A DNA stretch of 64,000 nt, taken from assembly GCA_964019335.1 (NCBI GenBank), contig OZ025685.1, positions 124,001-188,000 of the forward strand, given 5' to 3'. How positions within the stretch are numbered: position 1 is the first letter of the stretch; each line of letters opens with the position of its first letter. The translations under genes were made by a program, and so were the position numbers. The notes below the pieces were generated by a model. It was given only the letters and a program-made list of their open reading frames with translations. It was not told the DNA's origin and did not search any database. This stretch comes from Diplonema japonicum. Its lineage: Eukaryota > Protista > Euglenozoa: Diplonemea. Below are positions 7,273 to 56,302 of this stretch, piece after piece.

Positions 7273-7955
7273 ATAGCTATTTACTGCCAACAAGTAATGA
7301 CTTTACCGTTACCTCGAGGTCGGTAAAGCATTACTTGGCGGTAGGTAAGTGGTTTTATTTCGCGACACTCTGAAATTACTTCACCACGAGGGGCACAACA
7401 GGGTGACAAGGGGTACAACAAGAGAGGGGTTACAAAGGTTACAATACAAGTTGTTTTTCCTCCTTTTGTTGACTAAGAGCTGCCGCTGTCGCTGGCATTG
7501 CCACTGTCACCATCTCTAATCAGGCCTTCCCATACCTAGCGCGGCCGCTGGCTCCTTTTTTTCTGCTGCTTCGGTATTTTGAAGTCTTTTGGGGAGCTTG
7601 GGTAAGCTGACTAAGTTACCCTTACCCACAGAAGAGTTACCCACAGAAACTGGGAACAAGGCCTAGCCAAAAGTGGGCAAATTGGGAGGAAAAAGTAGTC
7701 CAACTTGGAACTGAGCCGAGGCAAAAGTTGGCCAATTGAGCTGAACCTGGGGGGAAATAGCAAACTGAGAGGAAAAAGTAGCCCCACTGGGAACCGAACC
7801 GAGGCAAAAATTGGCCTACCGAGGCATATTATTTAACGGAAACCCCCTATTACTTCACGGAAAACAGGCCATTATTTCACCGTGAAGTAATGAGATTTAG
7901 CGTGAAGTAATGGGCCCCCCAGTGCGTGAAGTAATTTCTGAAGAGTGAAATAAAA
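7273..7955 (-). mobile_element. Crypton-like non-autonomous element, copy D
   Basis: ATAGCTATTTA end (7273-7283), hairpin ~7282-7343, inverted repeats 7366-7384 and 7926-7947 (TTCAGAAATT shared with copy E), GTGAAGTAAT iterons, TGTAACC repeats as in copies A/B. No recognisable coding remnant. Confidence 0.6.
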
Positions 7956-22506: not shown

Positions 22507-23019
22507 CAACCTATGTGGGAGGAGGGGTTTTTTTTTTTTTTTTATTTCACTCTTCGTAATATGGGATAGCTATTTCGCCGTGGTATTTTTTAAGGGGAAG
22601 TAAAGCACTTATTCCCACTTTTAAGGGCTGGAATGGCCTCAGATGGCCAAAAATAGTCAAAATGCCCCCCTCCCCCTCCCACCCCAAAAAGATTTTTTAA
22701 GGGGTTGGGTACATGCGAGACCCATTTTTTTTCACTCTGAAAGCGCCATTATTTAGCTCCAAAATCTCATACTTTAACTAGTTAAATAAATAATGAGGCC
22801 CCTTAGTGGGTGAAGAGAGTGAAATAAAAAAAGGGGGGGGGACTTAAAAAAAAAACATTTACACACACATATTCCCCTCCACCAGTCCTTTTTTTTTCTT
22901 CCCCCCCCCCACGAATGCCAACTGAAAAAAAAAATCACAAAAAAGAGGAGGGTTAAACAAAGGGGCCTCGTGTCCCTTTTGTCCCCCCCACTCCACCCCA
23001 CCTTCAAAAGAAAAAAAAA

Positions 23020-26542: not shown

Positions 26543-26592
<50 letters not shown>

Positions 26593-27514
26593 ATATAACT
26601 CGAGCCGGGTTTTCAAGGGTGGGAGTGAAAATAATATTTTACATTATGTCACTCCCAGCTTTATTTTCACTCCCGGTTTACCTTGAAATTAGGCCCAGGA
26701 GTGAAATAATGTTCGAGCGTGAAATAATGTAACATTATTCCACTCCTGGGCCTAATTTCACCTATTTCACCTATTTTTACAATGGGAAGGAAGCCGAAGG
26801 CAATGGGCAAAAAGGCGAAGGGTACAAAGGCGTCGAAGATCATGAACGCCAGCTTGCCAGCACTTACGAAGCAGAGTGGCACCGCTTTTGCTCTTTTCAC
26901 AACTTCAGAACAACAAGATCGAAAAGCCCGACGGAAGACGAGTTGGTATTGTATTTCCAAGATATGAAGGACAATTTGGGCAAGTTACAGCAAGATCAAC
27001 GCCATCATCCAACGAAACTTCGGTAAAAAAAATGCAGAGCTTTCCCAGGGTTGCACTTCTTTTGAAGCGCTTTGAAGAAGGCCATGAGGTGAAAAAAGCT
27101 TCGGTGTTTAGTCAGGAACAAATGAAAGAGTATCTGGCAATGAAATTCAGCGATTCCTACAACATAGTGTGTCAGGCATATGCAGCTTGCATGTTTGCAG
27201 GACAAAAGAGTCGCACAAACTGAAATTTAGCGACGACACCTTGTAACCCAAAAAAATCCCACTTTTCACCTGTTGTAACCCTGTAACCTCCCACCCTTTC
27301 AAACCCGGCTCTTGTTAAATAAAACAACGTATTAGTGAAAATAAGAGCATTATTCCACTTGTGGTGGCAGGTTTAACTCGTAGCTTTTTACTTCACTCGC
27401 TGCGCTCGTGAAGTAAACGGAATATAAGTTCACGAGCGAAGCGAGCTACTCGTTAAACCCCCTGCCACCACGCGTGAAATAATGCTATCTTATTTTCACT
27501 TAATAAATAGCTAT
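26593..27514 (+). mobile_element. Crypton-like tyrosine-recombinase element, copy A (frameshifted YR remnant)
   Basis: Across frames: PTEDELVLYF / TIWASYSKIN / SFPRVALLLKRFEEGHEVKKASVFSQEQM / ESHKLKFSD. Inverted-repeat sites 26602-26625 and 27288-27311, hairpin 27334-27500, end TAATAAATAGCTAT. Confidence 0.8.
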
Positions 27515-47807: not shown

Positions 47808-48468
47808 ATAGCTATTTATTAAATGAAAATCAGATAGCCTGATTTCACGCGTGGGGTCCCCTTTTTGACTCGTTTTTTTACTTCACTCGCTTCGCTCGTG
47901 AAGTGAAATCATGCTCTGATTTTATTCAATACTGCATTTTATTTAATGATGAGCTGCTCTCGAAAAGAATTTAGGTGCTAAGTGTGGCTTCGCTGCTGCC
48001 TGCTTGTAGCGGCGCAATGCGCGAGTCTTTACTGAACACGGTACTGGGTTTGGTATGATCAATTCGGCGAATCGATGTTGACGTTTATGTCAAACGTGAT
48101 TCTGTACACTGTTGAAGAAGTGGGCTGTGTCGAAGGGGACAGGGCTGAAGGGGCGTGGGTTTGATCGAGTGGCAGGTGCAAAACCTCGTTGGAAGCATGT
48201 CTTCCATCACAGCTTTGGCCTCTTTCTCGAGGCTGATGCCCTTGGCTCGCTTCCCGGTCGCCTTCGGTTTTCTTCCCATTTTGCTAGAAATGACTGTGGG
48301 CATGAAATAAAGTACCTGATTTTCACGCCCAGCAAAATCAGCAACGTTTGGCTTAAAAACATGAGGAAAAAATCAGATACTTTATTTCACGCCCGTGAAA
48401 TAAAGTGAAACCTGATTTATATCTTCCGGCCTAAATTCTTTGAGAGAGCTGCTCAGAATTAAATAAAA
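47808..48468 (-). mobile_element. Crypton-like element, copy C (diverged subfamily)
   Basis: ATAGCTATTTATTA end; CACTCGCTTCGCTCGTG hairpin; inverted-repeat sites 47951-47975 and 48430-48454; ORF stub MGRKPKATGKRAKG homologous to copies A/B. Confidence 0.78.
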
Positions 48469-48717: not shown

Positions 48718-49535
48718 TTTTATATAACTCGAGGTTTTCAAGGGTGGGAGTGAAATAATGTTCGAGCGTGAAATAATGTAACATTATTCCACTCCTGGGC
48801 CTAATTTCACCTATTTCACCTATTTTTACAATGGGAAGGAAGCCGAAGGCAATGGGCAAAAAGGCGAAGGGTACAAAGGCGTCGAAGATCATGAACGCCA
48901 GCTTGCCAGCACTTACGAAGCAGAGTGGCACCGCTTTTGCTCTTTTCACAACTTCAGAACAACAAGATCGAAAAGCCCGACGGAAGACGAGTTGGTATTG
49001 TATTTCCAAGATATGAAGGACAATTTGGGCAAGTTACAGCAAGATCAACGCCATCATCCAACGAAACTTCGGTAAAAAAAATGCAGAGCTTTCCCAGGGT
49101 TGCACTTCTTTTGAAGCGCTTTGAAGAAGGCCATGAGGTGAAAAAAGCTTCGGTGTTTAGTCAGGAACAAATGAAAGAGTATCTGGCAATGAAATTCAGC
49201 GATTCCTACAACATAGTGTGTCAGGCATATGCAGCTTGCATGTTTGCAGGACAAAAGAGTCGCACAAACTGAAATTTAGCGACGACACCTTGTAACCCAA
49301 AAAAATCCCACTTTTCACCTGTTGTAACCCTGTAACCTCCCACCCTTTCAAACCCGGCTCTTGTTAAATAAAACAACGTATTAGTGAAAATAAGAGCATT
49401 ATTCCACTTGTGGTGGCAGGTTTAACTCGTAGCTTTTTACTTCACGAGCGCGGCGAGTGAAGTAAAAAGCTACGAGTTAAACCTGCCACCACAAGTGGAA
49501 TAATGCTATCTTATTTTCACTTAATAAATAGCTAT
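48718..49535 (+). mobile_element. Crypton-like element, copy B
   Basis: Body collinear with, and apparently identical to, copy A (offset 22049); 4-nt and 76-nt deletions at the 5' end; perfected terminal palindrome. Confidence 0.85.
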
Positions 49536-50912: not shown

Positions 50913-50984
50913 AGGGCACGCCCGGGTTCGAACCAGGGACCAATCGGACTGCAGCCGAACGCTCTACCACTGAGCTACGTACCC
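50913..50984 (-). tRNA. tRNA-Cys(GCA)
   Basis: Cloverleaf GGGTACG/CGTGCCC, TAGCTCAGTGGTAGAGC, anticodon loop CTGCAGT, GGTTCGAAC; U discriminator. Confidence 0.93.
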
Positions 50985-51078
50985 ATGTGGTTATTTGGGG
51001 GTCACGTTAGTCATACGTTGAATCTGTCAGTTACGACAATATTCACATAGGGCATTTTACGCCGAACGGCGATTGTCT

Positions 51079-51149
51079 GCGACCGTGGTCTAGTGGCATG
51101 ATGGATCCCTCCCAAGGATTCGACCCGGGTTCGATTCCCGGCGGTCGCA
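51079..51149 (+). tRNA. tRNA-Gly(CCC)
   Basis: GCGACCG/CGGTCGC acceptor stem, TGGTCTAGTGG, loop CTCCCAA, GGTTCGATTCC, followed by a T-run terminator. Confidence 0.95.
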
Positions 51150-51229
51150 TTTTTTATTGAGCTTTCAGGAGCCCCAATTACTTTTTACATCTTTATTTAC
51201 AGGACGAAAAGAGAAGAAAGAGAAAAAAA

Positions 51230-55414: not shown

Positions 55415-55606
55415 ATTTTATCTGATAGTTCAGAAATTTTTTCACTCCTAAACCCCCCCCTATAATCTGATTACCCCCCTCTCATAATTTGATAATCCGG
55501 GCTATAATTTGATAGCTCAATTATGGGCAAGACTTAGGTGTTAATAGCCCGTGGCTGCCAAATAAAAGGGGGGAAAGTGACTTAAAACATCTGAGCTCAA
55601 GATCAT

Positions 55607-55665
<59 letters not shown>

Positions 55666-56302
55666 ATCAAATGCCGAAAACAAAGAAGGAAGAGAGTCTT
55701 CTACCCGAAATAAGCAAAGCACAGTACCTGAAAACATGGGCTGACTTTTGTGAGGAAAAGACGTAGAACCGACTGAGGATGAGGTTCTCGCTGCTTTCGT
55801 CTTCAGGGGCCCTTGTTCTTCAGCACGCTTGCAAAAAAGTTTGACACGGTCCCATTCCCAACCTTCTGGTTGCATTTTCCTTAAAAAACAGCCCTTATCT
55901 GGGAGTACTTGGTCCAAAGAGAGGGAGGGGCAGCACCATTTTCCTTCAGCTTCCTAAGATGACAATGTTACAAGGTCAATAGGGTTGTCTGGGGGACCAA
56001 AAATGTGTAGGGTCGCCGCACTTCCGCCTGAATCAGCTGAAAATAGGCCGTTTTTCATAATTTGATTGACAGTTGATAGCCCATAATTTGGTTTTGGGTT
56101 TTTGGCCCACTTTCTCGGTCACTCGGAGTGACTCAATTTCTGAACTATCAGATAAAATTACTTACTTTGCGCCAAAATATGGCCATCCCATTTACTCTTG
56201 AACCGTTTTTTTTTTTTGACCTCGGGCCCTGCAGGCCCTCGGCCAAAAAACCCACGATTCTCGAGTAAATTATGGCCATAATTTGTTGCAAATAAATAGC
56301 TA
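55415..56302 (+). mobile_element. Crypton-like element, copy E
   Basis: Perfect 24-bp IR (55415-55438 / 56135-56158), long hairpin, end AATAAATAGCTA. Coding stub from 55671 MPKTKKEESLLPEISKAQYLKTWADF, then PTEDEVLAAF in a shifted frame (matches copy A PTEDELVLYF). Confidence 0.78.

What the first reader, a model, noticed from the sequence alone, without database searches (positions are those of the whole stretch)
26593..27514. Tyrosine-recombinase (Crypton-like) element family with asymmetric IR + terminal hairpin ends: five copies in 64 kb
Seen: five elements (7273-7955 -, 26593-27514 +, 47808-48468 -, 48718-49535 +, 55415-56302 +) with divergent bodies share one plan. The 5' end is TTT(T/G)AT plus IR-left and iterated GTGAA[A/G]TAAT-like motifs (a different ATAATTTG repeat in E). 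Then comes a short ORF stub, IR-right, ATAAAA, a long hairpin and an invariant 3' end AAATAGCTA. Flanks are T-rich with no obvious TSD. The stubs in A/B/E (LLPEISKAQY..W..F; PTEDE.L..F; TIWASYSKIN; FPRVALLLKRF...KKASVFS; E...LKFSD) resemble the N-terminal part of Crypton tyrosine recombinases as I recall them. Knowledge: asymmetric subterminal IRs plus a 3' stem-loop are hallmarks of rolling-circle Helentron/Helitron2 elements, which use HUH enzymes. Inference: a YR-driven element that may move through a folded single-stranded intermediate. Best candidate for an undescribed system here.
Basis: partly seen in the sequence, partly recalled or inferred. Interest (0 to 1): 0.88.

Follow-up and report, generated by a model that had tools for sequence, protein, structure and literature searches.

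The report
Hairpin-ended tyrosine-recombinase transposons in a diplonemid
The five repeats are real copies (plus a sixth, truncated one) of a family of very small jumping genes that move with a Cre-like tyrosine recombinase. They have an end structure (inverted repeats, a long DNA hairpin and a fixed 12-letter tip) that I found no report of for this kind of eukaryotic transposon.

Summary
All five elements, plus a sixth truncated copy at 22540-22829, share one plan:
- a T-run followed by IR-L;
- family-specific iterated 10-mers;
- an ORF or ORF stub;
- IR-R ending in ATAAAA;
- a stable palindrome;
- AATAAATAGCTA at the 3' tip.

The genome (62.5 Mb) is probably Diplonema japonicum. It holds about 540 such ends above chance.

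Intact autonomous copies exist. They are 1.66 kb long with a single ORF (for example L013:2937-4596), and five copies are 98.3-99.9% identical. The ORF is a two-domain tyrosine recombinase with invariant R-H-R-W-Y. It passes the Pfam Phage_integrase cut-off, and its model matches Cre, XerH and IntI. I found no Helitron Rep.

Window B and D are internal-deletion derivatives of a 1.6-kb recombinase-coding element (L009). Insertion is at T-runs, and head-to-tail junctions read GCTA|TT|ATTTCAC.

I class the family as a new structural variant of Crypton-type DNA transposons, which are described as lacking TIRs. Movement through a folded single strand is not shown, but three features are compatible with it: compensatory palindromes, TC/TC mismatches inside the IRs, and flip/flop palindrome centres.

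The scan had already noted this family on other pieces of the same genome.

The parts
26589..27513 (+). Element B: non-autonomous internal-deletion derivative of the B family. It covers TTTG plus IR-L through to AATAAATAGCTA.
   Evidence: Matches L009 element positions 1-686 and 1329-1606 at 87-89%. Sequence; repeats.
26586..26625 (+). IR-L of B (T-run, then ATATAACTCGAGCCGGGTTTTCAAGGGTGGGAG).
   Evidence: 40-nt inverted repeat with 27288-27327, 83% complementary. The conserved non-complementary blocks TC/TT and TC/TC are shown.
26621..26761 (+). Iterated family-specific motifs (GTGAAATAAT-like) in both orientations; presumed recombinase-binding sites.
   Evidence: 7 copies of AGTGAAATAA (up to 1 mismatch), all in the 5' ~150 bp and the 3' ~165 bp of the element and none in the ORF region.
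26783..27240 (+). Frameshifted, truncated stub of the recombinase gene. It keeps the N-terminal SAM-like/core-binding domain only; the catalytic domain is deleted.
   Evidence: hmmsearch of the six-frame pieces against the YR profile: E 4e-13, 1.2e-6 and 3.3e-5 in three frames. Collinear with the L009 ORFs.
27288..27327 (+). IR-R of B, ending in ATAAAA (27319-27324).
27330..27505 (+). 3' palindrome (hairpin) of B. The arms carry the family motif. There are two inner units, each with an 11-nt centre (TCGCTGCGCTC and GAGCGAAGCGA).
   Evidence: MFE -55.3 against -17.9 kcal/mol for shuffles, z -11.6. Unit orientation.
27502..27513 (+). Terminal 12-mer AATAAATAGCTA, the only sequence shared by all families. 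The element ends after GCTA.
   Evidence: Head-to-tail junctions GCTA|TT|ATTTCAC in L033, L047 and L049 fix the boundary.
7273..7955 (-). Element A: ~680-bp MITE-like member of the most abundant family.
   Evidence: Related to the decayed autonomous A copy L061 (96% over 308 nt). Palindrome z -4.7.
22540..22829 (-). Sixth copy (A2 family). It runs from IR-L to IR-R only and is followed by an A-run; it has no palindrome or terminal 12-mer.
   Evidence: BLAST to A2 positions 18-295 at 77%; sequence.
47809..48468 (-). Element C: non-autonomous. It keeps only the first codons of a B-like recombinase.
   Evidence: (z -4.8).
48718..49534 (+). Element D: B-family copy with a shorter 5' region. Its single palindrome has perfect arms, and its centre is inverted relative to B.
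   Evidence: (MFE -74.1, z -21.8).
55415..56302 (+). Element E: a separate family (motif CCATAATTTG) with an internal poly(A) tract and a weak recombinase N-terminal stub.
   Evidence: z -5.9; E 0.006.

Best explanation
These are chromosomal copies of a superfamily of very compact DNA transposons. Autonomous elements are about 1.4-1.7 kb, and there are hundreds of 0.5-0.9-kb deletion derivatives. They sit in a diplonemid genome, probably Diplonema japonicum. Their only protein is a Cre/Xer-like tyrosine recombinase (YR), so they are Crypton-type by enzyme.

Shown:
- the recombinase gene with its catalytic residues;
- near-identical autonomous copies at different loci;
- non-autonomous derivatives that keep both ends;
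- family-specific 10-mers repeated at both ends;
- a conserved 3' palindrome and terminal 12-mer;
- T-run insertion sites.

Inferred:
- The recombinase binds the iterated 10-mers in the 5' subterminal region, in IR-R and in the palindrome arms, and so brings the two ends together.
- It joins the invariant AATAAATAGCTA tip to the TTTTAT start of IR-L, excising a circle. The head-to-tail junction GCTA-TT-ATTTCAC is the footprint of such a joint.
- The joint then recombines with a run of T in the target. Strand exchange occurs inside the Ts, which leaves T on both sides and no true target duplication.
- The degenerate mirror of the tip that lies just after IR-R, and the TC/TC mismatch in the IRs, make the structure asymmetric, so only one side is used.
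For: **Recombinase**
- Pfam PF00589 matches above the cut-off (36.7-70.2 bits).
- R142, H249, R252, W275 and Y284 are conserved across families and in outside relatives.
- The AF2 model has two domains, and Foldseek matches Cre at 3.5e-9, XerH, IntI and XerA.

**Autonomy and recent activity**
- The L013 element is 1660 bp with one ORF of at least 150 aa.
- Five copies are 98.3-99.9% identical and have different flanks.
- A 97%-identical ORF is present in the D. japonicum transcriptome.

**The gene belongs to the elements**
- Every non-DIRS integrase hit examined is followed by AAATAG[CT]T[AT].
- Window B and D are collinear with L009.

**Binding sites**
- Each family has its own 10-mer, in 5-8 copies confined to the two end regions.

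**Ends and target**
-.

**Abundance**
- 603 hits against 60 for the control.

**No Rep**
- PF14214 gave no match.

**Relatives**
- 140 proteins at E<=1e-30, many on stand-alone 1.1-2.4-kb contigs.
- Metagenome contigs L069-L077 carry the gene, then iterated repeats, then a large palindrome. One has a centre GAGCGATAGCGAG, like the diplonemid GAGCGAAGCGAG.
Against: - No excision product, circle junction or empty site was seen. The only public runs were contig sets that break at the repeats.
- The crossover position inside the T-run is inferred from flank statistics alone.
- Two of 39 copies have 17-24-bp flank duplications, which a tyrosine recombinase should not make.
- The role of the palindrome is unknown.
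- The Helitron Rep search had a silent control.
- The AF2 model is of moderate confidence (pLDDT 65.7).
Confidence: 0.78

Rival explanations
1. Same elements and enzyme, but the substrate is a folded single strand (or extruded cruciform). The joined ends, IR-R and the palindrome form one long hairpin. The recombinase exchanges one strand pair at the foot of an internal loop, and replication resolves the junction. This is how integron attC sites and CTX-phi attP(+) work in bacteria.
For: - Stems differ between seven families but pairing is kept.
- The joined ends fold into one hairpin of -43 to -92 kcal/mol, with the cut point GCTA|TTTT beside an internal loop.
- The only conserved IR mismatches are TC opposite TC on the ORF strand.
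- Palindrome centres occur in both orientations in the F, B, A2 and E families.
- Window D has its right arm rewritten as the exact complement of its left arm.
Against: - Inverted protein-binding sites and recombination between arms in double-stranded DNA can give the same patterns.
- There is no orientation bias relative to neighbouring genes (7 same, 8 opposite).
- There are no single-strand data of any kind.
Confidence: 0.2
2. The copies are integrated forms of a small circular plasmid or episome (2-micron-like, with a Flp-like recombinase and inverted repeats) rather than of a transposon proper.
For: - Relatives turn up as stand-alone 1.1-2.4-kb contigs in many samples.
- Inverted repeats with flipping centres recall Flp-mediated isomerisation.
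Against: - There are hundreds of dispersed chromosomal copies with unique flanks, plus abundant deletion derivatives.
- There is no replication gene or other ORF.
- Repeats also assemble as short stand-alone contigs, so those contigs do not prove an episome.
Confidence: 0.08
3. The copies spread by retroposition of a transcript from the strand opposite to the ORF. The variable 5' T-run would then be a poly(A) tail, and the occasional long flank duplications would be target-site duplications.
For: - T-run length is variable.
- Two copies have 17-24-bp flank duplications.
- LINE-like and DIRS-like elements are present in the genome (scan note s1-869555).
Against: - The four Ts pair with the internal ATAAAA of IR-R in every family.
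- Tandem junctions carry only TT.
- Derivatives are internal deletions that keep both ends, not 5' truncations.
- 37 of 39 copies have no such duplication.
Confidence: 0.04
4. Non-autonomous Helentron/Helitron2-type rolling-circle elements moved by an HUH Rep/helicase. The recombinase gene would be mere cargo.
Against: - There is no Helitron_like_N match in six frames of the genome (the control was silent).
- Four diverged families each keep their own recombinase together with matching binding motifs at both ends.
- The intact autonomous element has no room for a Rep.
Confidence: 0.02

Closest known systems
Crypton DNA transposons (CryptonF/S/A/I; Goodwin 2003; Kojima & Jurka 2011, PMC3212892)
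   Same: A eukaryotic DNA element whose only enzyme is a tyrosine recombinase with the R-H-R-Y tetrad and an N-terminal SAM-like domain. There is no reverse transcriptase and no true TSD. Non-autonomous derivatives outnumber autonomous copies. A circular intermediate is presumed. The nearest ESM Atlas clusters are eukaryotic integrase families, some carrying DUF3504.
   Different: Cryptons are described as having no TIRs and either 4-6-bp terminal direct repeats or no terminal repeats (PMC3212892; PMC13465315), and are mostly 3-7 kb by my own knowledge. These elements are 1.4-1.7 kb. They have 35-48-bp IRs, one of them subterminal. They also have iterated binding motifs, a 60-180-nt palindrome, an invariant 12-mer tip and a T-run target. 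They carry no DUF3504 or GCR1_C domain.
Helentron / Helitron2 elements
   Same: End anatomy only: a 5' IR matched by a subterminal 3' IR, followed by a hairpin and a short conserved 3' tip, with insertion at T-rich/TT sites and no TSD.
   Different: The enzyme class differs. Helentrons use an HUH Rep/helicase, whereas here the only ORF is a tyrosine recombinase and no Rep was found.
Integron attC sites and CTX-phi attP(+) / IMEX elements (bacterial tyrosine recombinases acting on folded single strands)
   Same: A tyrosine recombinase paired with a long imperfect hairpin. Structure is conserved rather than sequence. Conserved unpaired or mismatched bases make the hairpin asymmetric. The exchange point lies beside an internal loop.
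   Different: Those systems are bacterial and experimentally shown to use single strands. Here nothing about strandedness is known, the host is a eukaryote, and the element carries its own recombinase.
DIRS/VIPER/TATE tyrosine-recombinase retroelements of Euglenozoa (PMC6681497)
   Same: Tyrosine recombinase, inverted terminal repeats in DIRS, and presence in euglenozoans. A DIRS-like element with recombinase plus RT/RNase H is in this same genome (L012).
   Different: These elements have no RT or RNase H. Their recombinase is not close to the resident DIRS-like one (BLASTP E 0.05).
Yeast 2-micron plasmid Flp/FRT system
   Same: A tyrosine recombinase with inverted repeats whose intervening segment flips between two orientations.
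   Different: It is an episome with replication and partition genes, not a dispersed chromosomal repeat.

Membership tests
Crypton (tyrosine-recombinase DNA transposon) | Encodes a tyrosine recombinase with the catalytic R-H-R-Y tetrad. | tested here: met
   PF00589 above cut-off. R142, H249, R252 and Y284 invariant or nearly so. Fold matches Cre, XerH and IntI.
Crypton (tyrosine-recombinase DNA transposon) | No reverse transcriptase or RNase H, and no other transposase, in the element. | tested here: met
   The 1660-bp autonomous element has a single long ORF. Pfam finds only Phage_integrase.
Crypton (tyrosine-recombinase DNA transposon) | No terminal inverted repeats; short (4-6 bp) terminal direct repeats or none. 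| tested here: not met
   IR-L and IR-R span 35-48 bp in every family, and there is a 3' palindrome. Only a T-run (2 or more T) is shared by the two junctions.
Crypton (tyrosine-recombinase DNA transposon) | The recombinase clusters with a named Crypton group (F, S, A, I). | tested here: inconclusive
   No Repbase sequences were available. The nearest ESM Atlas clusters are arthropod, mollusc and cnidarian integrase families, some with DUF3504. The best named HMM hit is a firefly hypothetical protein. No DUF3504 or GCR1_C domain in these proteins.
Crypton (tyrosine-recombinase DNA transposon) | Moves via an excised circular DNA. | not testable with these tools
   Only contig-level runs were available. 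Head-to-tail junctions exist in the assembly but do not prove circles.
Helentron / Helitron2 | Autonomous copies encode an HUH Rep fused to a helicase. | tested here: not met
   No PF14214 match in the genome (the control genomes were also silent). Autonomous copies encode only the recombinase.
Helentron / Helitron2 | Asymmetric terminal IRs, a 3' hairpin, and insertion between T and T. | tested here: met
DIRS-order retrotransposons (incl. VIPER/TATE) | The recombinase is accompanied by RT/RNase H. | tested here: not met
   Absent from these elements. Present in the separate element L012.
Folded-single-strand recombination sites (attC / CTX attP(+)) | The recombinase acts on one folded strand, and the junction is resolved by replication. 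| not testable with these tools
   Only structural parallels are available.

The most novel reading that the evidence does not exclude
A eukaryotic transposon whose tyrosine recombinase works on a folded single strand or extruded cruciform. The joined ends, IR-R and the palindrome would form one hairpin with a defined internal loop. One strand pair would be exchanged at GCTA|TTTT with a T-run target. The flip/flop centres would be the trace of hairpin-templated synthesis. This would be the first eukaryotic counterpart of integron attC or CTX-phi-type recombination.
Probability: 0.2. Interest if true: 0.85.

Novelty: new variant of a known kind. Interest (0 to 1): 0.66.

Why it matters
- **New to the lineage.** I found no report of a DNA transposon, or of a tyrosine-recombinase DNA element, in diplonemids. 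For the sister kinetoplastids, only Merlin had been reported as a DNA transposon as of 2021 (PMC8101967).
- **A tractable Crypton.** Crypton ends are notoriously ill-defined. This family has sharply defined ends, mapped candidate binding sites, a 1.66-kb autonomous copy and hundreds of natural deletion derivatives. That makes the transposition mechanism of eukaryotic tyrosine-recombinase elements directly testable.
- **A mechanistic link.** Helentron-like end anatomy combined with a recombinase, and the parallels to bacterial folded-strand substrates, raise a question: is the end structure dictated by a shared intermediate rather than by the enzyme?
- **A possible tool.** The element could give a compact recombinase-plus-site tool for diplonemids, a group for which genetic tools are still few.
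- **Wider spread.** Relatives with the same 'gene plus palindrome' layout occur in environmental assemblies, so the group is probably widespread.

Tried and rejected
- **The search for homologous proteins** with the A2 recombinase gave no hit. The exhaustive HMM search then found thousands.
The DNA of the closest Logan/ENA relatives (P0004-P0020) could therefore not be read.
A3 found nothing in metagenome or viral contigs. P0019 then gave 9 loci.
- **Reads.** The one run search returned only Logan contig sets and no run on record as RNA. Laying four of those runs on window:44700-50600 showed the same C-D arrangement in three samples, but no empty site and no circle joint, because contigs break at the repeats.
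- **Nested insertion as a source of an empty site.** The long L016 copy turned out to have unrelated internal sequence, not an insertion.
- **Lox-like reading of the IRs** (each IR a palindromic core site with a direct spacer). Rejected: the two halves of each IR are not related to each other (reading).
- **Orientation bias relative to genes.** None: 7 same, 8 opposite.
- **Helitron Rep search.** Negative, but with a silent control.
- **One BLAST run without low-complexity masking** was swamped by poly(A) hits. It was repeated with masking.

Full report
**What is in the window.**

The window looks eukaryotic and euglenozoan. Long ORFs lie almost all on one strand and are separated by T- or A-rich spacers.

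I read all five elements. Each begins, after a run of T, with an inverted repeat (IR-L). IR-L is matched by a second arm (IR-R) that lies not at the 3' end but 80-200 nt before it. IR-R always ends in ATAAAA, which mirrors the TTTTAT at the start. After IR-R come a short unpaired leader, a palindrome, and the terminal AATAAATAGCTA.

AAATAGCTA occurs 8 times in the window against 0.23 expected. The 3' palindromes of seven families have z-scores of -4.7 to -21.8 against dinucleotide shuffles.

A masked BLAST with family representatives finds the five elements plus a sixth copy at 22540-22829 (-). That copy runs only from IR-L to IR-R.

**Genome-wide picture.**

The genome has 62.5 Mb in 132 contigs. 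TAAATAGCTA occurs 603 times against 60 for the reversed control. The B-type 19-mer occurs about 200 times with up to 2 mismatches.

I read 40 loci taken in the order listed, plus others. Their ends sort into these families:
- A: 0.6-0.76 kb, the most abundant.
- A2: the family that includes the autonomous copies.
- B and B2.
- C.
- E.
- F.

**The enzyme.**

A six-frame search with Pfam Phage_integrase gave 31 matches in the genome. The hits that are not part of a DIRS-like retroelement (L012) are each followed within 200-400 bp by AAATAG[CT]T[AT].

L009:6210-7808 is a 1.6-kb B-family element with the same ends as window B and D. It carries a frameshifted recombinase gene. Window B and D match its positions 1-686 and 1329-1606, so they are internal deletions that lost the catalytic domain.

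L013:2937-4596 is an intact A2 element of 1660 bp:
- It has one long ORF. The open frame is 437 aa, or 378 aa from the first ATG, and there is no other ORF of 150 aa or more.
- Five such copies at different loci are 98.3-99.9% identical.
- The protein passes the Pfam cut-off.
- R142, H249, R252, W275 and Y284 are conserved across families and in outside relatives.
- An AlphaFold2 model (pLDDT 65.7) has two domains and matches Cre (E 3.5e-9), XerH, IntI and XerA.

No Helitron Rep domain was found, although the control for that search was silent. The stubs in B and D match the N-terminal part of the recombinase profile in three frames. E matches weakly. A and C keep only the first codons.

**Host.**

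The best hit of an exhaustive profile search is a Diplonema japonicum transcript ORF (E 1.5e-104). It is 97% identical to an F-family copy. The genome is therefore that species or a close relative, and the F recombinase is transcribed.

**Sites.**

Each family has its own 10-mer, in 5-8 copies with up to 1 mismatch:

| Family | 10-mer |
|---|---|
| A | GTGAAATAAT |
| A2 | AGTTAAATAA |
| B | GAGTGAAATA |
| E | CCATAATTTG |
| F | GGGAAATAAA |

The copies are confined to the 5' ~130 nt and to IR-R plus the palindrome arms. Motifs that change together at both ends while the protein changes are what recombinase-binding sites would look like. That is an inference.

Only the terminal 12-mer and the TTTTAT/ATAAAA pair are shared by all families.

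**Ends and target.**

In three loci two elements lie head to tail and the junction reads GCTA|TT|ATTTCAC. This fixes the 3' boundary after GCTA.

| Position | Share of T | Ends counted |
|---|---|---|
| +1, +2 | 95%, 92% | 60 |
| +3 to +6 | 72-82% | 60 |
| beyond +6 | about 50% | 60 |
| -1 to -4 | 90-99% | 67 |

The most common 5' T-run length is 4.

I infer that strand exchange takes place within a few Ts that lie between the conserved tip and IR-L in the joined form, and in a T-run of the target. This gives T on both sides and no true duplication.

Two of 39 copies do not fit this. L067 and L038 carry 17- and 24-bp duplications of flank, set 10 nt from the 5' end and 1-6 nt from the 3' end. 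Control pairs reach 10 bp or more only 0.26% of the time. I cannot explain these.

**Features that bear on the single-strand idea.**

1. Palindrome stems differ between families but pairing is kept.
2. Aligning IR-L with the complement of IR-R shows that the only conserved mismatches form a 2-3-nt block. It reads TC(T) on the ORF strand in both arms. It lies 24-26 nt from the TTTTAT in F, A2, E, B and B2, and 12-13 nt from it in C, B and A. This checks scan note s1-869358.
3. The palindrome centre occurs in both orientations within families. This checks note s1-869444.
   - F: GAGCGAAGCGA four times, its complement once.
   - B, second unit: four against two.
   - A2 and E: both orientations also seen.
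4. Window D has its right arm rewritten as the exact complement of the left arm.
5. Joining the ends in silico gives one continuous hairpin of -43 to -92 kcal/mol. IR-R pairs with IR-L, ATAAAA pairs with TTTTAT, and the cut point lies beside an internal loop formed by the leader and the terminal 12-mer.

All of this is compatible with a folded-strand or cruciform substrate, as in integron attC or CTX-phi. It can also arise from inverted binding sites and arm-to-arm recombination in duplex DNA. Orientation relative to neighbouring ORFs is unbiased (7 same, 8 opposite). I put this reading at 0.2.

**Relatives.**

The profile search found 13,224 proteins at E<=1e-3 and 140 at E<=1e-30.

The closest relatives share about 35% identity with the A2 protein, including a C-terminal YxFSNI motif. 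They sit on stand-alone contigs of 1.1-2.4 kb.

Nine metagenome contigs from one such cluster (L069-L077) carry the gene, then iterated repeats, then a large palindrome. In L070 the arms are at 1632-1777 and 1813-1959, and the centre contains GAGCGATAGCGAG, close to the diplonemid GAGCGAAGCGAG.

The nearest ESM Atlas clusters are eukaryotic integrase families from arthropods, molluscs and cnidarians, some with DUF3504. The resident DIRS-like recombinase is not close (E 0.05).

**Comparison with what is known.**

By enzyme and by lack of RT these elements are Crypton-type. However, Cryptons are described as lacking TIRs, with 4-6-bp direct repeats or no terminal repeats (PMC3212892; PMC13465315, 2026).

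The end anatomy resembles Helentrons, but the enzyme class is different.

Full-text searches found no paper linking diplonemids with tyrosine-recombinase transposons. For kinetoplastids, only Merlin had been reported as a DNA transposon (PMC8101967).

I therefore rate the family as a new variant of a known kind.

**Limits.**

- The read tools returned only contig sets. These showed the same C-D arrangement in three samples but no empty site or circle.
- The scan had already noted this family on other pieces of the same genome, and two follow-up agents reached similar readings. I count that as agreement, not as independent evidence.

Noticed in passing
window 22540-22829 (-): An A2-family copy that runs only from IR-L to IR-R. 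It has a T-run on one side and an A-run on the other, and no palindrome or AAATAGCTA module. The IR-IR core may be a unit of its own.
   Followed up: partly
L067 (G000:C36:1-5600) and L038 (G000:C6:312500-315350): Two copies carry 17-bp and 24-bp direct duplications of flanking DNA. The duplications are set 10 nt from the 5' end and 1-6 nt from the 3' end, which a tyrosine recombinase is not expected to produce.
   Followed up: partly
L012 (G000:C74:82000-90000): A DIRS/VIPER-like retroelement with a gag-like ORF, a tyrosine recombinase (487 aa) and RT/RNase H ORFs. It is next to a non-LTR RT fragment and is unrelated to the hairpin-ended family.
   Followed up: partly
L016:690-2525 (G000:C1:181900-184750): A 1.8-kb element with A2-type ends whose interior is unrelated to the recombinase gene (48% identity, i.e. 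random). It may be cargo or a chimeric non-autonomous element.
   Followed up: partly
L009, L010, L011 (G000:C69 around 25-34 kb, 60-69 kb, 76-85 kb): Three copies of a region of about 9 kb or more. Each holds a 1526-aa Pro/Thr/Ser-rich repeat protein gene followed by the same B and A elements, so the insertions predate the duplication.
   Followed up: no
L069-L077 (metagenome contigs): Stand-alone 1.07-2.08-kb contigs that encode relatives of the recombinase. Most have AATAAATA just after the stop codon, then iterated repeats and a large palindrome. L070 has a 62-nt C-run/G-run block repeated 1907 nt apart (85% identical). The hosts are unknown.
   Followed up: partly
window 50913-51150: A divergent pair of tRNA genes (tRNA-Cys gca on the - strand, tRNA-Gly ccc on the + strand) inside the one-strand gene array.
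   Followed up: no
window 55604-55664: Element E carries an internal poly(A) tract of about 60 nt just upstream of its recombinase start codon.
   Followed up: no
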